A program made the translations under genes and the position numbers. DNA of 64,000 nucleotides, from NCBI RefSeq assembly GCF_963676685.1, contig NC_092352.1, positions 32,364,001 through 32,428,000 on the forward strand, written 5' to 3'. Source of the stretch: Mytilus edulis (lineage: Eukaryota). The notes beneath the pieces are model-generated. The model searched no databases. It saw nothing but the letters and a program-made list of their open reading frames with translations, and had not been told where the DNA came from. Positions 30,901-64,000 of this stretch are shown here, piece after piece. Positions within the stretch are counted from its first letter, which is position 1. The number at the start of each line of letters is the position of its first letter.

Positions 30901-33900
30901 GAGTTTTTAATTATAATAGTAAGTCAATACTACAGCACCAATGTTCAAAATTTAAAATCAACCAAACTATAAAAAAAAAATATAAGGAAGATGTGGCAGC
31001 CCAATATCATTGTCAATGGATTTAGTGAACCCATTTGCATGAACTTATATGTATAAATATTGCACTGACATTATTTTTATGCCCCATTTATGGGCATTAT
31101 GTATTCTAGTCTGTGCATCCATTCCTCTGTTCGTTCGTCCGTTCGTTCATTCGTCTGTCCTGCTTCAGGTAGTTTTTGATGAAGTTGAAGTCCAATCAAC
31201 TTGAAACTTAGTACAAATGTTCCCTTTAATTTGATCCATTTTCGCGGTCCACTGAACATAGAAAAATGATAGTTTGGATGGGGCATCCGTGTACTAGGGA
31301 CACATTCTTGTTTTATTTTGAAATAATTTGTCTTTAACTTTTTTTTTAAATTTGATCTTTGATTTGTTTTCAGATAAGTATTCTGAAAACCCACATGCTT
31401 ACCCACAGTGATACCAGAGACTTTCCATGCTCGATACAAGGTTGTACCTATGCCTTTAAAACAAAAGGGGCTTTAAAACGTCATCTCAGAAGACATACAG
31501 GTATTGTTAAACACAATGATACTAGAAACTTTCCATGCTCAATACAAGGTTGTACTTATGCCTTTAAAACAAAAGGGGCTTTAAAGCGTCATCTCAGAAG
31601 ACATACAGGTATTGTTAAACACAGGGATACTAGAGACTTTTCATGCTCAATACAAGGTTGTACTTATGCCTTTAAAACTAAAGAGGCTTTAAAGCGTCAT
31701 CTCAGAAGACATACAGGTATTGTTAAACACAGTGATACTAGAGACTTTCCATGCTCAATACAAGGTTGTACAATGTACCTATGCCTTTAAAACAAAAGGG
31801 GCTTTAAAGCGTCATCTCAGAAGACATACAGGTATTGTTAAACACAATGATACTAGAAACTTTCCATGCTCAATACAAGGTTGTACCTATGCCTTTAAAA
31901 CAAAAGGGGCTTTAAAACGTCGTCTCAGAAGACATACAGGTATTGTTAAACACAGTGATACCAGAGATTTCCATGCTCAATACAAGGTTGTACTTATGCC
32001 TTTAAAACTAAAGAGGCTTTAAAGCGTCATCTCAGAAGACATACTGGTATTGTTAAACACAGTGATACCAGAGACTTTCCATGCTCAATACAAGGTTGTA
32101 CTTATGCCTTTAAAACTAAAGAGGCTTTAAAGCGTCATCTCAGAAGACATACAGGTATTGTTAAACACAGTGATACCAGAGACTTTCCATGCTCAATACA
32201 AGGTTGTACCTATGCCTTTAAAACAAAAGGGGCTTTAAAGCGTCATCTCAGAAGACATACAGGTATTGTTAAACACAATGATACTAGAAACTTTCCATGC
32301 TCAATACAAGGTTGTGCTTATGCCTTTAAAACAAAAGGGGCTTTAAAGCGTCATCTCAGAAGACATACAGGTATTGCTAAACTAAAATCATAATAGATTA
32401 CTAAAAATAATATTTTATTATTTCATATGAATAAAAATATGAGCCAAAATTGACTAGAATATAATATTGAAGACCTTTTATTAAAATATCATGTTTTAAA
32501 GTATCCCATCAGCTGAATAATTTTGTCAACAGAAACAGTTTGTTTTATCTCTTCCTTGAATGTGGTTGCCTTGAATATTTGAAGTCTTGGGGCTATTTCC
32601 ATTCAGGTCAAACCAAAGACTTTCAAATTTGACAATTTGACAAGCTGGTTCTATGCTATGATCTGTATTGTTAGAGTGACATGTCATGTTGAGGGTAAGC
32701 CCATTAAAAACTTACTTGGCATGTTTGTATACCATTATATTGCCTTATTAGTAAGGATGATCTGTATTGTAAGAGCGACATGTCATGTTGAGGGTAAGAC
32801 CATTAAAAACTTACTTGGCATGTTGGTATACCATTATATTGCCTTATAAGTAAGGTGAAGAAGAAAAAAATTGTGCAGTACAAAGGTTGAGCCAAATCCT
32901 TATCAGGAAAATAACTAGAATAACAGATGTCACAAGCAGTGGAGCTAGATTAAAATTCCAAAATAATATTTTTTAAATAATGGTATTAAATGATAAAAGA
33001 CATTCTGTTATTTATAAATGAAAGATGTAATATATTTTTATTTTGTTATTTAAAGGAGAAAGACCTTATTCCTGTGAGGCATGTGGTCGTAGTTTTACAG
33101 AATCTGGTGCTCTGACTAGGCACATGAGATCAAGGTAGGTTTTGATTATTGGGAGATAAAGTGTTTGAGGAAAGAATTTTCATAGAAAGCTTGTTTGAAT
33201 ATATATGTTACAAAAAACATGACTACGCTTAAAACAGAATTTAGTACTTTGTACTCATACTTAAGACTGAAATTTCATAAAACAAATACCTTTGGAGTTA
33301 CTCTTGACGGCATATCAGAAAAGAAAAACAATTTACTGAATGCTCACAATAATATTGCACAAAGTGAGATGAATGCATTTCAAAATACTATTTATTGAAT
33401 GTGCTGAACTGAAACAATTTCTTTTTAACTAATTAAATGATATTCACTGGTTTCTAAGTATACTTTATTTATTGGTCGCTATTAATGCTTTGACAGAAGT
33501 ACACTATTTAACTTTTTGCTTCGAACACATCTCAGAAATAGGGCTGAAAACATCATAGAACTTGCATACCTACAAGTACTTTCAAAATACTGTTCTTTCC
33601 AGAAATACAATTTATAGAATTTGCACACAAATAAATACTTTACATGAACATTTTTTTAGGCTCATGGAATTTTATAAGTTGAAATGAATACTTTATAGGA
33701 ATATTTAAAAAAAAAACAAAAAACAATACACTTACAAATGTTCTAAATGGAAGTACACAGAGTGACATTATACAACATCAATTAAGTATTTTCATTTTAA
33801 GAAAAGCCAACCTGTTTACTACAACTTATCCAAGACTTGATTATCATTTGTAAATTGATATGTATATATTAACTGCACAAAAGTGAAAAATTTGAAAAGG

Positions 33901-36900: not shown

Positions 36901-39900
36901 AGGGGGGTAAAATTACACTAAAAAAAATTGGGTCAAGAATTTTAAAGGAAAGTAGTGATTTGGTCCAGCTGAAAAAGGTTAAAAATGAGCACTTCGGAAG
37001 CTGTCAAAAGATTTCAAGACGCCCTTAACATAAAATTGTCCATAATTTGAGTTAGAGCCAATGAAGTTTTCTATAATTTTGATATAATTTGTCCCAAAAG
37101 TAGTACAACACACTAAAAATTTCATTGAGAAAGCGCAGGTGGGATTTTTTAAATTTTCATTTATGTTCTAAAAGAAATGCACTACGAAATAATTGTGGTC
37201 TCAGACCATCTGTTACTTTCTGTAGAATGTTTGAATGGAAAGAGATAAACATAAAAGGTTCATTTTGAGTTTACTTGGTTAAAAATGTATGATCTTGTCC
37301 CATAACTTCTTGCAAGTCAATCTATCATGATCTTTTGTCATAGATCTCTATCCTACTATGACTATGACTGCTACTTCCCTCAAAAGAGAGTTCCTTAAGA
37401 TGGCTTTATATATTGGATCACTATAACAAACAATACTGACATTGCCAAAATTTGTATTTTTTTTGTGATTAACACAAACTTTGGATATTTGTTATAAGAT
37501 ACAATTGTTTATCCAGGTGAAACCAAAGATAGCTGTAAGGTTCCTTGTGTGGTAACTACTGGGTGTTCATACTGTGTTGCCAATCAAATACTGATATGAC
37601 TCATCTATTAGTGTCACTTTTCATTGGAGTCTTCAAATACTGGAAAAACATATATAAATTTATAAAAAAAAAACAATTAATTCTCGAAAAGTACAAAATA
37701 AATCTTTGACTAAAAAAGCACAAAATAAATCTTTGACTAAAGAAGTAAAAAATAAATCATTGACAGATTTTGTAGTTATAAATTATTATTTTTCAGAGTG
37801 ATGACATACTTGCGGTACCTTTTAAAGAAGAAGGGTAAGTTTGTAATTATTTTGATCAGTGCAATATTAAAGCTTAAAATATGTTCCAGATTGTGCTTGT
37901 TTTCATTGCTGAATCAAACATTTTTATAAAGATTATTTGGGGAAAAAATTGTTCTGTGTGTACAATTTCTTTATACTTTTTAAATGCATTTAACTTTGAA
38001 ACTCAGATGCTGAGAAGAAATTATAATGTAGTTACTCTTTTGTATTAGTACATGATAGACAGGCTCCCTCAGCATTCCCAATTAAAAAAAAACAAATCTC
38101 TGCAAATACTATTTCAATGCAGTTTTATAGGTTCAATGATTAACAAAATGTTAGCAGTTAATATGAGTGATATAAAAAATATTGGTTTAATGTCATAAGG
38201 TTACATCAATACCTTCATGATTGTGATAAAAAAAAGTAAACAAGACCATAAAATTCCATGGGCTATAATTTAAGTATTTTAAATTCAAACTTAATATGTG
38301 TATTTATTACTATGAATCTGTAACAACAGACAATTCTGTTTGTAGTGCCAAGGATGCATTGAAGCAGTTATTAGAACTACCAGATGATGATGAAGAAAAT
38401 GACAAGTTAACACAGAAATGTCCTGTTTGTCTGAAACCATTTAGAGGAACTTCATATCTCAAACTACATATGAAGTCACATATAGGTAGGTTAATGTTTA
38501 TCTCAAGCTACATATGAAGTCACATATAGGTAAGTTAATGTTTATCTCAAACTACATATGAAGTCACATATAGGTAGGTTAATGTTTATCTCAAACTACA
38601 TATGAAGTCACATATAGGTAGGTTAATGTTTATCTCAAACTACATATGAAGTCACATATAGGTAGGTTAATGTTTATCTCAAACTACATATGAAGTCACA
38701 TATAGGTAGGTTAATGTTTATCTCAAACTACATATGAAGTCACATATAGGTAGGTTAATGTTTATCTCAAACTACATATGAAGTCACATATAGGTAGGTT
38801 AATGTTTATCTCAAACTACATATGAAGTCACATATAGGTAGGTTAATGTTTATCTCAAACTACATATGAAGTCACATATAGGTAGGTTAATGTTTATCTC
38901 AAACTACATATGAAGTCACATATAGGTAGGTTAATGGTTTCAAAAAAAAATGGAAATTCATGGTGTTCCATTAGTTATAGGCACAGAAAAGTAAAATAGC
39001 TGTTTAATAATATTTATAATATATTTTATAAACTAAACTTTCTTGCTTTCTGTAAAGTTATTGAAATGACCTGAAGAAAATGTGTACTTTTACATAAATT
39101 ATATTTGTTTTATTTTTCAGGTGAAAAAGCTCATAAATGTACTGTGTGTGAAAAAAGTTTTATAACCAAAGACACTTTAAACAAACATATGAGTGTTCAT
39201 AATACAGAAAGGCAGTATAAATGTGGTGAATGTGGTAAACTGTTCAAAAGGATCTCACATGTCAGGGAACATCTCAAAATACATTCTGTAGACAGACCAT
39301 TTCCTTGTTCGGTTTGCTCCAAGTCATTCAAGTCTGCTGTAAGTAATATAACATAAATTTTCTCAGTGTTTATACCGAAGTCTTTTTACTTTTTAAATTT
39401 TTTTTTTAAATGTGTAAAAATCAAATTTAAAATATATAAAAATGTGCAAATTTTAAATAAATCAAATGAACTATTAGATGCTTGATGTTTGCAGTCATCA
39501 AAATAGAGCTGTGAATGGATGTCAAGATTTGTAAAATACAAATGTAATTGAAGTTAATACTTGTAGATTGTTGTCCATTTTTAGCTCACCTGACCCGAAG
39601 GGCCAAGTGAGCTTTTCCCATCACTTTGCGTCCGGCGTCCGGCGTCGTCGTCGTTAACTTTTACAAAAATCTTCTCCTCTGAAACTGCTGGGCCAAATTA
39701 AACCAAACTTGGCCTCAATCATCATTGGGGTATCTAGTTTAAAAAATGTGTGGCGTGACCCCGCCTACCAACCAAGATGGCCGCCATGGCTAAAAATAGA
39801 ACATAGGGGTAAAATGCAGTTTTTGGCTTATAACTCAAAAACCAAAGCATTTTGAGCAAATCTGAGAGGGGTAAAATTGTTAATCAGGTCAAGATCTATC

Positions 39901-53460: not shown

Positions 53461-56288
53461 CTTATTAGTTCAACTGCAAAAGTAAAATACATACAAATTT
53501 ATTGATAAATATTGAAATTGGTTACATGAATTACAAATTTTCCTTCATGTTGTGGATGTAGGTAAATCATGAATTTGAATGGTCAACAGAGAACAAATTT
53601 TCTTTAGTCTTTTCGGTTGAATTTGGCAGCTTTGTTCTTTGGCCACTGAACTGTATTTCCCATTAGCAGTTGGAAAAAATTTCTAACAAGTTGAAGTTTG
53701 ATTTGATAAAACAAATTGCTATTCGTTCAAGTCACAGTAATAAGTTTGTTCACTCATCAAAAGAAGACATAAATAAACAAGTAGCTTTTCTACTAAAAGA
53801 AATGCACCTGAACATAATTGCCTGTTTGGTTTGAAAGATCGGAGAATTATAATATAAAGATGTGTAAATCATTCCTCATAAACATAATACATTGTACATG
53901 TAGAAAACATCTATAGATCCTAAACATAACTATATGTAGACTACCATTAGTTTGAGCAAATTTGTGTTTCAAGTAATTTATGAAAGAAAACATTACAACA
54001 TGCAAAATAGGAGCCAACCACAGGATGTTCCATTTTGAGGGCACTGTTTTAGAAATTTGTATACTTTAAACAGGTGATCAAATTGTAAACACTTGAAAAG
54101 CCCTAAACCTTATTTTGAGAAATGTATTCTAACCAACCACATACAGGTAGTCATTAATAAATAACTTATATGCAACATCAAACATAAAACAAATTGTATT
54201 GTTTTACCACAAGGTTTTAATTAATATAAAGCCAAAGAATATCATTCAGTCTCTATAAATAGTTACCCAGTTTCACTCCTAAAAGGTCCTTTTGTATTTC
54301 TTTATTTTATTTTATTTTTATTCCTATTTCTACATGTCTACTGTTAAAACAATTTAGTATATTTGTTTATTTCTCCTTTGAAATTATTATGTGTAGTCCA
54401 TAAGATTAAAAGTAATTCTATTTGCAGTTATAAATTATTGAAGAAATGGAATAGTTTTAAATAAATATTATCGTTATTTATCTGTACAATTTTTTTTTTT
54501 ATAGAAATTTTTATTCAACGAAAGAAAATGAAAGTTTAAATTAAAAGAAAATGCCCTTTTTGTTTCTTTTTAACCATATATTAAAATAGAACATCTAAAG
54601 CAAACTCTACCTTTTTTCTCTTCAAATATCAACCACCTTCAACAGGAACCCTAACATGCGTCTCTAATTTAAAAAGTAAAGGTATGAGATACTTATATTA
54701 GAGTCTGACTTTTATTACTCCAACAAAGTCTTAAAAGATTAAATACTTAGAAACTCCAAAATGGATTTTAATTCTTCTTTATAAACCTCTTTTAAGTATA
54801 AACATTACTTTTTCTAAAGTTTTGGATAATGTTTTATATCATGATCAATTAGTAAAATATAACTCATTAGCTGCCAAATAATACAACTTGAATGAAGAAA
54901 AAAATATTCAAGTCAAATGTTTATAATAATTGGTTTATTAATTAAAGCAATGGCTTTAATTATCACCATTCACAAAAATAGTGTCTCATTTTTTTTTAAC
55001 ATGCCTCCAGCTATTCAATATAATGTTTATATTGCAGGGTACAAAACAAAATTGTTTTCCTTTTATTTTTGGACATGTTGGAAATCTATATAAATTCCTT
55101 CAAAAACATCTTCAAAAATAGGGATGCAATTTTGGAAAGGTACCAGTCAGTACTCCCTTTAATCACAAATGTTAAAGCTAAGTCAAACTGTTTATGATTT
55201 TGTAAAACTTTACTTTTCAGCAAAAATGACCTTGACAAGTTTTGTCAATTACTAATACATGTATGTGTTTATACAATTTAAGCATAATTACATTTACATT
55301 TACATCCTTAACTATTAAGATTATAACACAAAATTTGTTTATATAACAATAATCAGCCTTTTATATCTCTACCAGTGAGGGTGGCAGGTGCCCTTTAGAT
55401 GTTTTTACAACAATGAAATGTTCAAAATGGCTGGATCCACCCCAGAGCAGGGATAGCAGTATAGGTCACTGGTGCTGTGTGCAAAAAATTAATGTCTCAT
55501 GATTCCATTTCTTTGGATGACACTTTGGTGAAAAATTAAACTACATTGTAACAGTAATTTCTTTTTTATATGACAAAATTATTGGAAAACAATTGATTTT
55601 TTTACCAACAGCAAATTGGAAGCATGATTTTACTTCAAATTACAGTTTCAATTTTGGGAAAAAGTCACACAGACTAGTCACTTCTTAGTTATCTTGTCAA
55701 AAGATTAAGTAACTCAGAGAAGTAAATTATTTGGTCTATAAAAATAGACTAGTCGGTAGTCTAATAAGAATCTTCTTCCTTATAATTGAGTTTTGTTTCT
55801 AACAGTCTACAGTAAGCTTAAACTCTGTGGGCCTACCTATGGTCACATTACAAATCTAGTCCCCTTTGGTTACATACAGTATTTACAATAAAACCCAATT
55901 GATAAGGTTAAAATTATTAACAATCATTGAACAATTTGAGTCTGGGATGCAGGATGGGGCCTTAACCAGGAAAAAGGGATTTAGTCTGAAGGGGTTGTGG
56001 TAATTCAAATGTTTATCATTCAGCTTTGTTTTCAATAGCATGTCATTGAAATAGTTACTCCACGGATTAGAAAGAATAACTTGGATATCCTGTTTCCATT
56101 TAGGCAAAGAACCATTCATGATTTTCTTGTTTTAACGAAGATAACACGAAAAAATAGAATCTATTCAAAGATAACAGTTGTATATATAAAATCGTACAAA
56201 TATGTGAGGGTACTTTTACAGTTTTATGTGTCATTCAAAAGAGTAAATGGTTTTAAAGAAAAATCCTTTCTCATTTCACGAAACTTAC

Positions 56289-56430
56289 CGCTGGAAAAAC
56301 TATGTCACGTGAACAGATCAATTAGACGCTTTACATTAATCTAACACCTTCGCGTCAAGCGTTTGTACGATGTATGTCAACTATTTTTTTCTAAGGGAAG
56401 CAACTATGTAAACAATCCCTTTCTTCACAG
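56289..56430. promoter_or_regulatory. Putative compact bidirectional promoter of UBC9 (-) and RINT1 (+)
   Basis: Minus-strand donor CG|GTAAGT at 56288 pairs with the acceptor at 53474 before the UBC9 ATG exon; RINT1 ATG at 56431; CpG-enriched; E-box GTCACGTGA at 56304-56312. Confidence 0.6.
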
Positions 56431-59400
56431 ATGGCAAAATCAGAGAAGAATGTCCACGTTACAGAATACTTGAACCAAAATATAAAGACTCTATCAGATT
56501 TAAAAGATGTTCATAAAAATATAAAAGAAACTGTTGAGTCATTAGGACAACAAGTAATTAATGCCTTAAGTCATAGGAACAGTACACATGAATGAATCCA
56601 TGACAAATCGCCCCACTGGCAAATCGCGAGTTTGTGAAAAAGTGTGGCGATTTGGTGTTGGGCGTTTTGCTAGTGTGGCGATTTGTCCTGCTTCCCACAG
56701 GAATGAGGATGAGCAATTTCATTTTGCTCTGTTTTTGAACTGTTGAAACATTTATGAGGGTAGTAATGGGGGTACCTTCATGACGTATATCATCGTGTAA
56801 TGTGTTTTCGTACTAATAACAATTTTCACTGCTTACGGTTTTTACTGTTGAGTTTTTATTTAGGTGTTTACTCAAATTTAAAAAGCATGTCCTGTAGATT
56901 GATTTTAGGTATCTAGTTTTTTTGTCAATGATTTCTACGATTTTTTACTGTTTCCGATTACTTTGCGATTTTTGTATGTCAAAAAAACGGCGTCATATGT
57001 TTTCGTATGAAATAAAAATTGGATCAGTACACGGACAGGAAATGACTACAAAATCCGGAAATACATTTTTTCTAAAGTCGTGGTTCGGGTGATCGCTTAA
57101 ATCTTAAAAAAAGTTATTAAATACTTTTCAGTACAAAAAATTACTAGTAAAAAGTGTAAGGTTGGTGTTTCGTGTGATGAAATTTTTACGGATTTTGATT
57201 AATTTCAGATTGGCACCTGGTTTGTACAAAATACATTATTTTTTCTAAAATAAAATGCAGTTTTCAAAATTTATGATTAAATATAAAAAGTTAAGACTGT
57301 TTTCATCTTCATGTATCAAGGATGTATAAAAAAAATTGTCAATGAAATATTGAATAGTTAGATTTTGAACAACCATTTTATATAAGAACCCTGCTAATTT
57401 TAACTCGATGGTTTGTAATTAAAACGGCCAAAAAAACACATGACAGTCATACGTCTTGAAGATCCGGTGTCTGACTTGCAAAAAACATATCTGGACTTTA
57501 TTTTAACCCTTCAGAATTTTTTTCCACAACTATTCTAGTGATGCGTATTTTTGACATTAAATAAAAATGGCTAAATAGGTCAGTTTTATTTAATTTGTTC
57601 TAACGTCTTTAAAAAGCGACGTTGAATATGTTTTAAATATATCAAGTTGTAGTGGTGTTGTTGTTCTAAATATAGAAACAGAAAAACATGCCACAATGTA
57701 CGCGTATGCAGTCGAAACCGACGAAATGTGGTTGATACGAAAACATATGACATACGAAAACATATGACACGACGATAATGGTAAAAATTCTTGCCAAATG
57801 ACGTTAACAGTAATTTTTAGTGCATGACGATTAATTGTACACTTTCTTTTAGACGATAAAATTATCTGAATTTGACGAATCAAGCTATTTTTTTTCCAAA
57901 AATAATGGTGATGATAACTATTTGAGTCTTTAGTCTTTATGAAGCAGTCAGGGGACTTACTTAAATAAGTGATTTTCTAAATCACTGATTCAAGTAACAT
58001 TATTTCCATAAAGGTTGGAAGTTAGAGTTGTCTTTCTTTAATAATCACCTATTTAAGTAGTACAAATTAATCACTAGAAGAAGTGATTTAATTTTATTGT
58101 AGCTTTAAATATAGAATACTAATGATCCAGGGACTAATTATGTTTCTAAACTTATCAGAACCAACATCTGTGTTGTCTAGGATGACCAGGTCATTTCAGG
58201 TGATGACCTTGTACTGAATCTAGGATAATGACATAAAAATCACTTGTTTAAGTATCAGACCTCAATTTCCTTCAAAAAAATCACTTCTTTAAGTATCATT
58301 CTTATAATAACCCCCACTAATTTCAACATCCCCGAACAGTGAAATTTTTATCGCGAACAGTAGAATTTTATTACATAATGATAATCTGAAAGATAAAACC
58401 TTGAACTTCACAGGAAAAATACTCCCACTGCTGGGAAAAATCTTTTAAGAAAATATCAGTTCATTATGTAAAGCCATTATTATAGCATTTTTTCAACTAA
58501 AATAGAATTTTCAGCTAAATGATAGCATCAAAGGCATAAACCTTTCTACTTAAAAGAAGCAAAAAGTTCATTTTTTTTAATTTTACTAATTTATAAAAAG
58601 ATATTTTTTAAACCTATGTGTTTAAAATTTTGAAAAAACTACAAAATCCCAATTTGTGACAAAACCTCGAATTTGCTACTCAAATAAGTGATTTAAAAAT
58701 CACTTATTTCAGTACATTGTAAGTCCCCTGACTGTTGAGACATCTGACGAATCACAGTAAAATTAAACCAATTTGACACTATAGGTAGTAAAAAATTACC
58801 GCTTGATGCCTGTCAGTAAAGGGCATATAATTTACATCCCTCATTTATGCCTAATTTCTATACATGTCTACTGTGCACATACATTTGTAGATTACTAATA
58901 TTATAGTTGTATATTTTGTGAGAGTTTAATGAAATGAAGGTTTAAATAACCAAATTGAGGTTTCCACAGGGACTTGTCAGTGTCTTCAAGACGAAGTGTA
59001 GTATAAAAAATGACCTTCCATTAGTGGCAGAACCAGGGGTTGTAGAAATTCCTTGTTCAAATTACATATTTAAGGTAAAAAAGTGCGGACTATACACAAC
59101 CAATTACGGTAATGCATATTTTATCTACAAAATCTAATATTACTGCAACAATTCTTTTATTTTTCTTAATAATAATATTTTTAAAAATGAAGTGGCGACT
59201 TGTCTTGGTCCCGAATTGTCGAAAACTGATGCCAAAATTACTTCAGACTTTGGTGTCAAAATGTCTTGTTACTGGGTTGTAACCACCCCCTGTTTTAGGA
59301 TCAATGCTTTTGAATAGGGACATGATAATGATGATATTGTTGACCCCCCCCCCCCTCCTTTTCAAAATGACTGGACTGCCCTCAAATTTTTGTCCAAACA

Positions 59401-62400
59401 GTAAATGTACAAAATGTATATTCATTATTGTCACAATAGACCTTTAAACTTTGGATGTCAAACAACGATTGCAGTTTCATTCTTGCATCTGTAGATTAAA
59501 ATTATTTCTTTTATGTTGTCAAATTTTTATAGGAAGGAATGCCTGATGCTTCATATACGTGTATTTGTCAGCTTTAACAAATTACTTCTCTTCCAAGACA
59601 CTTATATTTTGACGTATTTAAAAGGAGATGATGCCTGATGCAACAGATATTTTGGCATCAGATATTTTGTAATATGACGTCAAAATTTTACAGGAACCTG
59701 TGTCATGTCCAATAATGGAGGACAAATAGCCATAAGTTGTATTACAGTTCTTCCCTGATTATTGCGGAGTTTGCATTGCTAAAGTTTTATAGTGGCCTGT
59801 GTTATTTTGTGTGAAATGTTTGTCCTTTCAGGCTTTTTTTCTTATTGCTGCATTAATCATGTTAATGCTGCATGCTCTCTGTCCTGCTTAATCTGTAACC
59901 CATCAATTGATGAATCATTTTTTTTCAACAACCAAAGACTAACAGAAATGTGAACCCTATTAAATCATTGTAATATTAGGCTAAAAGTGATTGGTATAAT
60001 CGGTGCAAAAAACTTAGGCCACTGACTTTCTGAGACATTGTGTTTACAAATGTTTGATAATGCAAAAATCTCTACTCTTAAACTAAGCATCCAAGTTAAT
60101 TTCTGAATGTCATCAAAAAAGCTTTTATTTTTCAGTTACATGAAGCCAGTTCAAGTTTGCCTACTGAGATAGACTATGCTACACAAGGTGCTAATGATAC
60201 ACAGACTGAGGTGACAAACATACAACACCGTAAAGATAACCTTCATCATCAGGTCGTGGAACATGTTAGAAATCAACAGGATGTTTGTAAAGAACTGGAA
60301 AAAGTTACGACAGAAATTCAACAGTATCAGTATTATCTGGCATACCTACAGCTGATAGAAGAGGTTGACAAAATGAGGTCAGTTATACTACAGAGATTTT
60401 TAATTGTCATCTAACATGTATAAAGTATCCATGATATAACAGTGTATAACCTATAAAGAGTTGAAAATAGAATGTCAAGTGAAATGACACCTTCATGCGG
60501 TACAAGCTGGTAGAGTAATTAGGATGGATAAAACCTCTGCTATCATTTCTTTTTGCACCATGTTATGCCTGCATACAATAGCACCACAGTATATTATTTG
60601 ACAGTATGTCTGTTATCCCCTCCTGTAATAAATTTTGGTTCAACTTGTTGCTTCAGTTTAACATATTTATTTTAACCTATAGTTATCAATGAAGTGCCGT
60701 AATGGTCTCATCAACTTAGAAATGAAAACTCTTGTTTATTATAAAAAGATAATATATGAATAACTAAAAAAGTAATAGAGAACAAAAATTTAATTCATAT
60801 AAAGCATTTAAGTTTAACTATCATATATGTTGTATTTATATTTTAGTTCTGATATTCAGACAGCTATGCAGAAAGATGTAATGAGAAGTGCTGTAGAAAA
60901 TTTTCAGACCATGACACATGTCTTATTGTCAAATATTTTATATTTTAGTTCTGACATTCAGACGGCTACATTAACAGATGTCATGAGTAATGCTGTGGAA
61001 AGTTTTCAGACCATGACGCATGTCTTATTGTCACATATTTTATATTTAAGTTCTGACATTCATACGGCTACGTTAACAGATGTAATGACCAATGCTGTGG
61101 TTTTTAGGACCATGACACATGTCTTATTGTCATATATTTTATATTTTAGTTCAGATATTCAGACGGCTATGTTAACAGATGTAATGACTAATGCTGTTGA
61201 AAGTTTTCAGACCATGACACATGTCTTATTGTCAAATATTTTATATTTTAGTTCTGACATTCAGACGGCTACATTAACAGATGTCATGAGTAATGCTGTG
61301 GAAAGTTTTCAGACCATGACACATGTCTTATTGTCACATATTTTATATTTAAGTTCTGACATTCATACGGCTACGTTAACAGATGTAATGACCAATGCTG
61401 TGGTTTTTAGGACCATGACACATGTCTTATTGTCATATATTTTATATTTTAGTTCAGATATTCAGACGGCTATGTTAACAGATGTAATGACTAATGCTGT
61501 TGAAAGTTTTCAGACCATGACACATGTCTTATTGTCAAATATTTTATATTTTAGTTCTGACATTCAGACGGCTACATTAACAGATGTCATGAGTAATGCT
61601 GTGGAAAGTTTTCAGACCATGACACATGTCTTATTGTCACATATTTTATATTTAAGTTCTGACATTCATACGGCTACGTTAACAGATGTAATGACCAATG
61701 CTGTGGTTTTTAGGACCATGACACATGTCTTATTGTCATATATTTTATATTTTAGTTCAGATATTCAGACGGCTATGTTAACAGATGTAATGACTAATGC
61801 TGTTGAAAGTTTTCAGACCATGACACATGTCTTATTGTCATATATTTTATATTTCAGTTCAGATATTCAGACGGCTATATTAACAGATGTCATTAGTAAT
61901 GCTGTGGAAAGTTTTCAGACCATGACACATGTCATATTGTCATATATTTTATATTTTAGTTCAGATATTCAGACGGCTATGTTGACAGATGTCATGACTA
62001 ATGCTGTTGAAAGTTTTCAGACCATGACACATGTCGTATTGTCATATATTTTATATTTTAGTTCAGATATTCAGACGGCTATGTTGACAGATGTCATGAG
62101 TAATGCTGTGGAAAGTTTTCAGACCATGACTCATGTTTATCATAAACACAGTGGATCCCATTGTAAACATCTCCTCAAATTCATCAAAGACACAATTCTA
62201 TTCTGGTATAAGATACTTCATGAAAAACTTGCAAGGTACAATATATACTATTTGGTAGTTCTTAACAATTTATGTAGATCATGATGATTAAAGTATAATT
62301 TATCTGATTGATAAAGATGTTTTTCTACCACTAGTTAAAGTTATTTTAAAGTTGAATTAAATATTAATTGCTTGTTGCCTTTCTCACAATGATACATGTA

Positions 62401-63752
62401 ATTGTGAAAGACATAATCAGAGTGCAAATAAAAAATTATTGGTCCTTTTAGTTCGTACATTGTATTAACAAGAGTCATGATGAACATTTTGACTGCATTT
62501 GAAAAATCAGGTCCTATTGGGTTTATACCTTAATAATGCAAAATAAATAAGCACAGCAAGTTAAACAAAAAAATACAAAGTCATACACATGTGATAGTAT
62601 GAAATTGGGAGAAGTGGACTCATAGATTGTTACTATCATGATACCATCTTTTTTGCAGTGATTTTGAAGAAACATTGAAGTCAGTTGGTTGGCCAATGAT
62701 TGGGAATACAGTTAAATCTCCACCAGTACACAGCAGTCAACATTATGAATTGCTGGAGAAACTATTTATGTCACTTTTGGCTATACAGCTTCCGTATCCT
62801 TATTTATTTCAGTATGACAAAGTAATTAAAAGTAAAACAAGAATGTGTCCATAGTACACGGATGCCCTATCGTAGGTGGGGCATAAAAAGTGAATTTAAA
62901 TGAAGATTATATAGCTAATCAAACTTATTTTATTTGGTTTCAATATTTATGTGTTTCTTTTGTTCGTCCTTAAGTTCTTGCTTCCCAAAATTTGTTTTCT
63001 GTTCTCTTAACTTTAGTTTACTCAACAAATATCATGAAACTTATACACAATGCTAATTACTTCATAGTCAAGTTTGAATTTAGGTGGCATAACTTTTACC
63101 ATTCTAGAGCTATGGCCCTTTGCAAATTGAAAAATTGCTGAATTTTTTGTTTCCGTTCTCTAACCTAAGTTTGTCTCAATCATATGTCATAAAACTTATA
63201 TACAATGCCTTTACCATAAAATTCAAATCTACTCTGAATTTGGTTGGCATTACTTTTATCGTTCATGGGTTATAACGCTTTATAATTTATGTGCATGAGG
63301 GAGCATTATATGTGTCCCATGGACACATTCTATATTTTTTGATTTTTGACTTGGTTCCTGTGTATCTTTTTAGCAACTATTGTGAAGAACTGGTCATATA
63401 AATCTAAAAATGTGGGGGCCAATAATGTATCAGAGAGGTTTACAACAAGATATTTTCTACTCTTCAGAAGATAAATTTATAAAAAGCATATGTATCATAA
63501 TATCTTGATCTTCTTTCTGATATCATTCTTGTTCGTATTCGGTATGTGTGGTTTGATATTGATATTGCTTTTATTGTTTAAACTAAGAAAGAGCAGGTCA
63601 AAGTCCAAGAAGTTGTCCTTAACATAGAATAGTCAGTCTGTATCAGATAAACAAGATGAGCTTCTACTTCCGTTACAACTAATGGTGCTACCATTGGAGA
63701 AAAGATTTAAATATCATTTCTATGGCAACAGAAAAACAAATAACTTGGAAAA
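56431..63752 (+). CDS. RINT1: RAD50-interacting protein 1 (RINT1/Tip20), 5' part, continuing beyond the window; exons 56431-56553, 60136-60377, 62062-62235 (acceptor ambiguous, see findings), 62659-62793, 63633-63752
   Basis: YLQLIEEVDKMSSDIQ...SHCKHLLKFIKDTILFWYKILHEKLASDFEETLKSVGWP and LPLQLMVLPLEKRFKYHFYGNRKTNNLEK match recalled RINT1 motifs ([30 protein letters not shown]..NRQTN). Confidence 0.9.
57945..58734. mobile_element. MITE in RINT1 intron 1
   Basis: Perfect 16-bp TIRs cagtcaggggacttac / gtaagtcccctgactg; subterminal aagtgatt/aatcactt palindromes. Confidence 0.8.
60835..62136 (+). repeat. Minisatellite, 13 x 102/99 bp with a 303-bp higher-order unit; unit = intron 3' end + 5' part of RINT1 exon 3
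   Basis: Acceptor-like tatatttNAG ends at 60846, 60948, 61050, 61149, 61251, 61353, 61452, 61554, 61656, 61755, 61857, 61959, 62061; open as the 485-aa ORF 60827-62284. Confidence 0.97.
62794..63632 (+). other. U12-type (minor spliceosome) GT-AG intron in RINT1
   Basis: 5' site GTATCCTT (62794-62801); branch point TCCTTAAC (63616-63623) 9 nt before the intron end; no polypyrimidine tract; frame joins as CC|T = Pro. Confidence 0.9.
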
Positions 63753-64000
63753 GGTGAGCTATTATGATAAATAAAAGTATGAATTGGAAATCACAAATTT
63801 GCAAAAAAGTTACATTTTTAAAGAATATATTTTGTCATCCTTTGTCTGCAGAGTCTAGCTTTCCTTGAGCTTGATTCTGAAGATTAAACATTATTCAAGT
63901 ATAAATAGCCTTTCATTACATGTTGTCTTTTGTGAAATTTGGCAATAGCAATTCCTTCACAGCTGATAATAGTGTTAACATTTGCTTCCTATGGGATTTA

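What the first reader, a model, noticed from the sequence alone, without database searches (positions are those of the whole stretch)
60835..62235. RINT1 exon 3 has a ladder of 13 in-frame splice acceptors that could add 0-405 aa
Seen: 13 acceptor-like AGs are spaced 102 or 99 bp apart, all multiples of 3, with no stop codon across 1215 bp. Any of them gives a continuous RINT1 frame with 0-12 extra 33/34-aa repeats (SSDIQTAMLTDVMTNAVESFQTMTHVLLSYILYF). The length variant is an exact 3-nt deletion. Many unit differences are synonymous (tct/tca, gat/gac, gtc/gta, gtg/gtt), though several are not. Acceptors differ: mostly TAG, AAG at 61050/61353/61656, CAG at 61857. Only the last acceptor (62061) gives an ortholog-length protein, so either 12 near-identical upstream sites are skipped or an expanded protein is made. 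Intron-derived residues form a hydrophobic VLLSYILYF stretch in a tethering protein.
Basis: partly seen in the sequence, partly recalled or inferred. Interest (0 to 1): 0.82.

Follow-up and report, generated by a model that had tools for sequence, protein, structure and literature searches.

The report
Silent decoy splice acceptors in mussel RINT1
An intron of a mussel's RINT1 gene holds 12 tandem copies of the next exon's splice site plus its first 77 bases. RNA reads show that only the last, genuine site is used, so this is one more example of a known repeat type ("mirage" minisatellite) and not a way to lengthen the protein.

Summary
A 102-bp tandem array lies at 60835-62140, with 13 acceptor AGs spaced 102 or 99 bp apart, and a 485-codon frame stays open through all of them. 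The gene is RINT1 of a Mytilus mussel.

The interpretation does not hold. In three raw RNA-seq runs, depth is zero over 60801-61800. All 11 informative junction reads join exon 2 to the last acceptor (exon start 62062). Thirteen contig sets guessed to be RNA hold exactly the share of words expected from the canonical exons alone. The annotated M. galloprovincialis protein (717 aa) and four other bivalve orthologues carry one copy of the unit.

The open frame needs no selection. A period divisible by 3 has odds of 1/3, an open founder about 0.46, and no stop arising in 28 substitution events about 0.25. There are only 8 distinct decoy types, because a 303-bp block was copied three times.

One real signal remains. 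Differences in the exon-derived part are enriched for synonymous, third-position changes (p about 0.001). I attribute this to sequence exchange with the selected real exon.

This is an acceptor-side "mirage" minisatellite, a kind known from amphioxus. The scan has already found many on other DNA of this genome. Because it is in frame, nonsense-mediated decay cannot be hiding decoy use.

The parts
56431..56553 (+). RINT1 exon 1 (start codon to ...GQQ)
   Evidence: tblastn of P0001 residues 1-41 against the window. The exon end is inferred from where identity stops; no joint was read.
60136..60377 (+). RINT1 exon 2. It ends with AG, the first two bases of a split Ser codon.
   Evidence: tblastn at 95% identity to P0001 residues 41-122. 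RNA depth and the donor joint at 60377.
60378..62061 (+). Intron 2 as actually spliced (GT..AG, 1684 nt). It contains the whole decoy array.
   Evidence: Joint 60375->62060 (cut +2), skipping 1684 nt, seen in 1+2+8 reads in X21, X22 and X24.
60835..62061 (+). Decoy array: 12 units of 102 or 99 nt, each made of the intron tail with its AG plus a copy of the first 77 nt of exon 3. Decoy acceptor G at 60846, 60948, 61050, 61149, 61251, 61353, 61452, 61554, 61656, 61755, 61857 and 61959.
   Evidence: TRF; unit table; zero RNA depth over 60801-61800.
60949..61857 (+). Three near-identical 303-bp higher-order blocks (units 2-4, 5-7, 8-10), at 60949-61251, 61252-61554 and 61555-61857.
   Evidence: TRF period 303 at 95%. 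Pairwise differences of 0-2 between corresponding units. 100% self-matches in the own-genome search.
62062..62235 (+). Genuine RINT1 exon 3 (174 nt). Its first 77 nt are the source of the repeat unit.
   Evidence: 100% identity to P0001 residues 122-179. Joints at both ends.
62659..62793 (+). RINT1 exon 4
   Evidence: Joints 62235->62659 and 62793->63633; tblastn.
63633..63765 (+). RINT1 exon 5, where the RINT1_TIP1 domain begins. The 3' end is approximate.
   Evidence: Joint at 63633. PF04437 positions 1-33 at G000:C9:32427667-32427765, which is window 63667-63765.

Best explanation
The array is an intronic minisatellite of the "mirage" type. A segment of about 102 nt spanning the intron-2/exon-3 junction of RINT1 was tandemly duplicated. 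It was then amplified by unequal exchange or slippage, most recently as a 303-bp three-unit block.

The 12 upstream acceptors are decoys that the spliceosome does not use. Splicing goes from the exon 2 donor straight to the thirteenth acceptor, and the protein has normal length.

The choice cannot come from the local 3' splice-site signals, because these are the same or better at the decoys. I infer that it comes from exon definition. Only the last acceptor lies within normal exon distance (174 nt) of the exon 3 donor and is followed by the unique 97 nt of exon 3. The decoys would define exons of 276 to 1389 nt full of intron-tail sequence.

The open frame is inherited from the founder unit. 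The synonymous bias in the exon-derived part is best explained by sequence exchange between the decoys and the selected real exon (concerted evolution), not by translation of the decoys.

Shown: the anatomy, non-use of the decoys in the sampled RNA, and a single unit copy in orthologues. Inferred: exon definition as the selector, and exchange as the source of the codon-like pattern.
For: Anatomy.

Gene identity:
- PF04437 exon hits lie downstream on the same strand.
- P0001, RAD50-interacting protein 1 of M. galloprovincialis (717 aa), is 100% identical over exon 3.
- Five bivalve orthologues each have one copy of the SSDIQT...VESF segment.

RNA:
- Depth is zero over 60801-61800 in X21, X22, X24 and X1.
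- Eleven junction reads use 62062.
- No read fits two places, so reads were not lost to multi-mapping.
- At about 25x exon depth in X24, full inclusion of the array would give about 210 reads, and none was seen. That bounds inclusion at about 1.5%.
- The expected 31-mer share is 0.175 for canonical exons only and 0.245 or more if any decoy were used. Runs X2-X14 show 0.18.

Local signals are not better at the real site. Pyrimidine content is the same. Decoy 11 has CAG. The well-placed CTTAT branch-like motif precedes acceptors 2-11 but reads CATAT before acceptor 12 and CGTAT before the real acceptor.

Chance: P(no stop in 28 events) = 0.25, founder tail open 0.46, period divisible by 3 = 1/3.

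Exchange: codons 11 and 13 show all four state combinations among units. The real exon shares its GTC/AGT/GTG haplotype with decoys 2, 5, 8 and 11 and not with its neighbour, unit 12.

Literature: amphioxus mirages duplicate intron-exon boundaries and do not disturb splicing (PMC3087553; PMC3902484).
Against: - Synonymous changes are enriched in the exon-derived part: 12 of 22 events against 22% expected (p = 0.001), with 15 of 22 at codon position 3. On its own this would also fit translated units.
- Only three raw RNA runs of unknown tissue were read, each only in part (6-18% of the run). A tissue- or stage-specific isoform is not excluded.
- It is not shown that the RNA-seq animals carry the same 12-unit allele. 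However, X1 holds a 91-nt decoy-type piece, and DNA run X15 holds 0.84 of the words.
- For unit 12 alone the bound is weak, at 0 to 1 of 12 junction reads.
- The exon-definition step is untested.
Confidence: 0.85

Rival explanations
1. Length-variable RINT1. Some or all upstream acceptors are used, at least in some tissue, stage or stress, and add 1-12 extra 33/34-aa units. Selection keeps the frame open.
For: The frame is open through all units. The period and the indel are multiples of 3. Synonymous changes are in excess in the exon-derived part. Because the units are in frame, such isoforms would escape nonsense-mediated decay.
Against: - RNA depth over the array is zero, and all informative junction reads use the last acceptor.
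- Thirteen further contig sets match the exons-only expectation.
- Orthologues and the annotated Mytilus protein have one unit.
- The intron-derived part shows no constraint (1 synonymous to 5 non-synonymous).
- Decoy units 1 and 3/6/9 carry changes at residues invariant across five bivalves (Q126H, L130Q, T131K, S140N, and the indel).
- The open frame is not improbable by chance.
Confidence: 0.05
2. Recursive (ratchet) splicing. The intron is removed stepwise through the decoy acceptors, so the decoys are used but leave no trace in mature mRNA.
For: There are many evenly spaced acceptors in one intron. First readers raised this idea for sister arrays in this genome.
Against: Recursive splicing needs a regenerated donor (AG|GT) at each site. 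Here every acceptor is followed by TT (AG|TTCWGA), and exon 2 ends in ...ATGAG, so the joined sequence has no GT donor. No intermediate joints were seen.
Confidence: 0.02
3. The array is an assembly artefact, or a private allele of the assembled haplotype, and so is irrelevant to the species.
For: Three 303-bp blocks are near identical, which is the kind of structure assemblers can mis-size. Mirage arrays are length-unstable (PMC3087553). The amphioxus BflGb6 mirage was mis-assembled in the draft genome.
Against: - The units are diverged (up to 16 differences) and have an ordered structure.
- DNA run X15 holds 0.84 of the sampled words. That is more than the 0.60 that the non-repeat part can supply, although X15 may be the source sample.
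- X1, from another study, holds a 91-nt decoy-type junction piece.

Copy number may still be wrong or polymorphic.
Confidence: 0.06

Closest known systems
"Mirage" minisatellites of amphioxus (Adh3, globin BflGb6/BflGb9, TnC, PGBD5)
   Same: They are tandem duplications spanning an intron-exon boundary. BflGb6 duplicates the 3' end of an intron plus the 5' part of the next exon, with 150-160 bp units at 81-100% identity. Interior units evolve in concert while edge units diverge. Regular splicing is not disturbed (PMC3087553; PMC3902484). Here the units are 102 nt and 84-100% alike, unit 1 at the edge is the most diverged, and splicing is canonical.
   Different: The host is a mollusc, not a cephalochordate. 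The array has 12 decoys, is fully in frame and has no stop. It shows a three-unit higher-order repeat. The exon-derived part carries a codon-like substitution pattern.
Human F7 intron 7 37-bp VNTR (silent 5' pseudo-sites)
   Same: The first element of this minisatellite spans an exon-intron boundary, which gives several identical splice sites. Only the one adjoining the real exon is used (PMC1557585).
   Different: It lies on the donor side, not the acceptor side. There the authentic site is the most upstream one, which was interpreted as 5'-to-3' scanning. Here the most downstream acceptor wins. A scan from the intron's 5' side would not predict that, but pairing across the exon would.
Other splice-acceptor minisatellites noted by this scan in the same Mytilus genome (nidogen, CDCA7, PSMA4, LIPE, MIF-like, PI3K regulatory subunit)
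   Same: All are intron tail plus exon start, amplified 16-91 times ahead of the genuine acceptor. Where RNA was checked, only the last copy was used (AI notes).
   Different: Several of those arrays have a stop in each unit, so nonsense-mediated decay could mask decoy use. The RINT1 array has no stop, so the absence of decoy-spliced RNA reflects true non-use.

Membership tests
Mirage minisatellite (junction-spanning tandem repeat) | The repeat unit contains an intron-exon boundary of the host gene itself | tested here: met
   Each unit consists of about 25 nt of intron tail with its AG plus the first 77 nt of exon 3. The last unit runs into the genuine exon.
Mirage minisatellite (junction-spanning tandem repeat) | Head-to-tail tandem array adjoining the authentic junction | tested here: met
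   TRF reports 12.9 copies at 60835-62140, contiguous with exon 3. This is the only locus of the repeat in the genome.
Mirage minisatellite (junction-spanning tandem repeat) | Duplicated splice signals do not disturb regular splicing | tested here: met
   Depth over the decoys is zero, and 11 of 11 informative junction reads use 62062. The word share of 0.18 in X2-X14 equals the exons-only expectation.
Mirage minisatellite (junction-spanning tandem repeat) | Minisatellite turnover: interior units homogenised, edge units diverged, length unstable | tested here: inconclusive
   Interior homogenisation and a diverged edge unit 1 are seen.
RINT1 / TIP20 family (host gene) | RINT1_TIP1 domain (PF04437) and orthology to RAD50-interacting protein 1 | tested here: met
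   Three exon-wise PF04437 hits above the cut-off lie downstream on the same strand. P0001-P0005 carry PF04437. Exons 1-5 map to P0001.
Recursive splice sites | An acceptor immediately followed by a regenerated donor (AG|GT) | tested here: not met
   All 13 acceptors are followed by TT.
Alternative tandem acceptors giving protein length isoforms (NAGNAG-like, on a larger scale) | More than one acceptor is used in mature mRNA | tested here: not met
   No informative read uses acceptors 1-12.

The most novel reading that the evidence does not exclude
The decoy units are not mere passengers. Either they are translated in a tissue or stage not sampled here, giving RINT1 an expandable N-terminal coiled-coil spacer. 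Or the array works as a conversion reservoir that feeds variant sequence into the start of exon 3. Either would explain the codon-like (third-position) pattern of differences among units.
Probability: 0.05. Interest if true: 0.6.

Novelty: new member of a known kind. Interest (0 to 1): 0.22.

Why it matters
As a protein-length dial it would have been striking, but the RNA data argue against that.

What remains is a clean natural experiment on 3' splice-site choice. There are thirteen acceptors with practically identical signals from -40 to +77, and all are in frame, so nonsense-mediated decay cannot hide mis-splicing. Yet only the one nearest the downstream donor is used. That argues for selection across the exon and against a first-come or scanning rule along the intron.

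The array also adds to the evidence that junction-spanning minisatellites are unusually common in Mytilus genomes. Three of the six larger arrays in this 64-kb window span splice sites. The cause of that abundance is unknown.

Tried and rejected
- Pfam on exons 2, 3 and 4 and on the long open frame, exon by exon and by reference, gave only sub-threshold or repeat-inflated noise. The PG_binding_1 and BTB_SANBR lines have 0 stretches passing on their own. The N-terminal exons lie outside PF04437, so I established gene identity from the downstream exons and from orthologues.
The only joining of exons was a local 31-mer count inside a script, read from the window file.
I therefore could not fetch the M. 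galloprovincialis genomic locus of P0001 or the loci of P0002 and P0003, and could not compare the array across species or haplotypes.
- The paper that coined "mirage" (Canestro 2002, PMC117041) is not held. I took the definition from two papers that cite it.
- Rfam found nothing in 56000-64000.
- A search for mussel literature on such repeats found nothing relevant.
- The joint to 61960 is rejected as evidence for decoy use, because its 30-nt side is identical in units 12 and 13.
- The 91-nt X1 contig at 61897-61987 (depth 3) is rejected as evidence for inclusion. It is isolated and ends at k-mer merge points. It fits faint pre-mRNA or DNA signal summed over several near-identical units.

Full report
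**What is there.** Tandem Repeats Finder reports one array at 60835-62140: period 102, 12.9 copies, 89% matches. It also finds a better-fitting 303-bp period at 95%. I located thirteen acceptor AGs, with the G at 60846, 60948, 61050, 61149, 61251, 61353, 61452, 61554, 61656, 61755, 61857, 61959 and 62061. They are spaced 102 or 99 nt apart. One frame is open from 60827 to 62284, 485 codons. The other frame I translated has several stops per unit. Each unit is about the last 25 nt of the intron (pyrimidine tract plus AG) followed by a copy of the first 77 nt of the exon. The array occurs only here in the 1.37-Gb genome.
- The 99-nt variant is a complex net -3 change and not a clean deletion.
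- Units 2-4, 5-7 and 8-10 are near-identical 303-bp blocks, so only 8 distinct decoy types exist.

**Which gene.**
- The N-terminal exons gave no Pfam family when searched exon by exon.
- PF04437 (RINT1_TIP1) matches three open frames downstream on the same strand. The first is at window 63667-63765.
- A word search with the long open frame returned RAD50-interacting protein 1 of Mytilus galloprovincialis (P0001, 717 aa). It is 100% identical over the genuine exon 3. The search also returned two 714-aa mytilid transcripts and two scallop orthologues.
- All five proteins have a single copy of the SSDIQT...VESF segment.
- tblastn places exon 1 at 56431-56553, exon 2 at 60136-60377, exon 3 at 62062-62235, exon 4 at 62659-62793 and exon 5 from 63633.

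**Is the ladder used?** The run search listed 14 contig sets that are probably RNA, holding 0.18-0.20 of the sampled words, plus raw RNA-seq runs carrying the species label. I laid three raw RNA runs and one contig set on 58001-64000.
- Depth is zero in every 200-nt bin from 60801 to 61800 in all four. The flanking exons stand at about 25x in X24.
- No read fitted two places, so reads were not discarded for ambiguity.
- The joint from 60377 to 62062 is seen in 1+2+8 reads.
- The only other joint, to 61960, rests on one read and one contig with 30 nt beyond the junction. Units 12 and 13 are identical for their first 38 nt, so this joint cannot tell them apart.
- If the whole array were exonic in X24, about 210 reads would be expected. 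None was seen, which bounds inclusion at about 1.5%.
- As an independent check, I computed the share of the query's 31-mers expected in transcripts. It is 0.175 with canonical exons only, 0.245 if acceptor 12 were used, and up to 0.565 for acceptor 1. Runs X2-X14, from at least eight studies, all show 0.18.
- Because every decoy is in frame and free of stops, nonsense-mediated decay cannot explain the absence of decoy-spliced RNA. The decoys are simply not chosen.

**Does the open frame need selection?** No.
- Counting each non-consensus state once gives 28 substitution events among the distinct units.
- With the observed transition/transversion mix, 4.9% of random changes would create a stop. 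The chance of none in 28 events is therefore 0.25.
- The founder's intron-derived nine codons are open with probability about 0.46 at the intron's base composition. A period divisible by three has probability 1/3.
- The joint chance is a few per cent. The scan's notes already list 23 findings of tandem acceptors in this genome, so one open example is expected.
- The hydrophobic VLLSYILYF peptide is what a U-rich pyrimidine tract encodes in any open frame.

**A real residual signal.**
- In the exon-derived 25 codons, 12 of 22 events are synonymous against 22% expected (binomial p = 0.001). Fifteen of the 22 lie at codon position 3 (p = 0.0009).
- The intron-derived part shows the opposite: 1 synonymous to 5 non-synonymous.
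- Four of the ten non-synonymous events, plus the indel, hit residues invariant across the five bivalve orthologues (Q126, L130, T131, S140). All of these lie in unit 1 and in unit type 3/6/9. The decoys are therefore not held to the protein's constraints.
- I read the synonymous excess as inherited from the real exon. Unequal exchange between a decoy and the terminal unit moves real-exon sequence into the array, and decoy sequence into the exon, where selection screens it.
- In support, codons 11 and 13 show all four state combinations among units. The real exon also shares its haplotype with decoys 2, 5, 8 and 11 and not with its neighbour.
- A simple snapshot model predicts about 61% of events at non-synonymous sites. 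In that model each decoy is a copy of the selected exon that then decays neutrally. The observed share is 45%, which does not reject the model (my own estimate, p about 0.1). This step is inference.

**Why the last acceptor?** Local signals do not explain it.
- The 40 nt upstream of the real site match those of the decoys, and pyrimidine content is equal.
- Decoy 11 has the preferred CAG.
- The well-placed branch-like CTTAT motif (A at about -23) precedes acceptors 2-11. It reads CATAT before acceptor 12 and CGTAT before the real one.

What is unique to the real site is its downstream context: 97 nt of unique exon and the donor at 62236, 174 nt away. Decoy use would define exons of 276-1389 nt, whereas exons 2-5 of this gene are 133-242 nt. 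I therefore propose exon definition as the selector, on general knowledge of splice-site pairing across exons. This was not tested here.

Recursive splicing is excluded, because no acceptor is followed by GT.

**Comparison with what is known.**
[quoted passage not shown] The globin BflGb6 array duplicates an intron's 3' end plus the next exon's start, shows concerted evolution with diverged edge units, varies in length between haplotypes, and leaves splicing normal (PMC3087553). Adh3, TnC and PGBD5 behave likewise (PMC3902484).
- The human F7 intron 7 VNTR is the donor-side counterpart, with silent pseudo-sites (PMC1557585).
- The RINT1 array meets the defining features that I could test.
- The scan has reported the same kind many times on other DNA of this genome. 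I learned the term from those notes and checked it against the papers.
- I found no published account for mussels.

**Limits.**
- Only three raw RNA runs of unknown tissue were read, and only in part.
- The array genotype of those animals is unknown.
Copy-number variation and the state of the locus in other Mytilus assemblies could therefore not be examined.

**Verdict.** The repeat is real and was accurately described. The protein-ladder reading is not supported. This is a new member of a known kind, of modest interest as an NMD-free natural test of acceptor choice.

Noticed in passing
window 31404-32382 and 38455-38936: Two further junction-spanning arrays lie in the neighbouring E4F1-like gene. 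One has period 108 and 9 copies; its unit ends ...ACAG|GTATTG and encodes a C2H2 finger. The other has period 44 and 11 copies at 99% identity; its unit ends ...ATAG|GTAGGT. With the RINT1 array, 3 of the 6 larger tandem arrays in this 64-kb window span a splice site. That is far more than the few per cent expected if arrays arose at random positions (notes s1-832388 and s1-832625).
   Followed up: partly
window 62833-62890 (RINT1 intron 4): A piece of about 32-55 nt draws very deep RNA reads, with depth 200-400 against about 25 for the RINT1 exons. Most of these reads continue on both sides into sequence unlike the window. Behind 62867 there is a consistent loose end starting CACTCGCACTATCATTTTC... 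This is probably a fragment of an abundant transcribed repeat or mobile element located elsewhere in the genome. Rfam found no match.
   Followed up: partly
window 58001-58750 (RINT1 intron 1): A stretch is transcribed on both strands at depths of 50-300, much higher than RINT1 itself. It shows many fixed differences and indels relative to the window, so the reads probably come from related repeat copies elsewhere.
   Followed up: no
window 59601-59800: There is a short island of RNA depth, with a summed X1 contig depth of 406 from about 10 contigs, around a 15-bp tandem repeat at 59640-59669. It is probably a dispersed repeat.
   Followed up: no
window 60316, 60363: RNA reads show A>G at 60316 (about half the reads in X24) and G>A at 60363 (nearly all reads) in exon 2. 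The named M. galloprovincialis protein differs from the window at two exon-2 residues (D/Y and Q/H). This is ordinary allelic or species variation.
   Followed up: no
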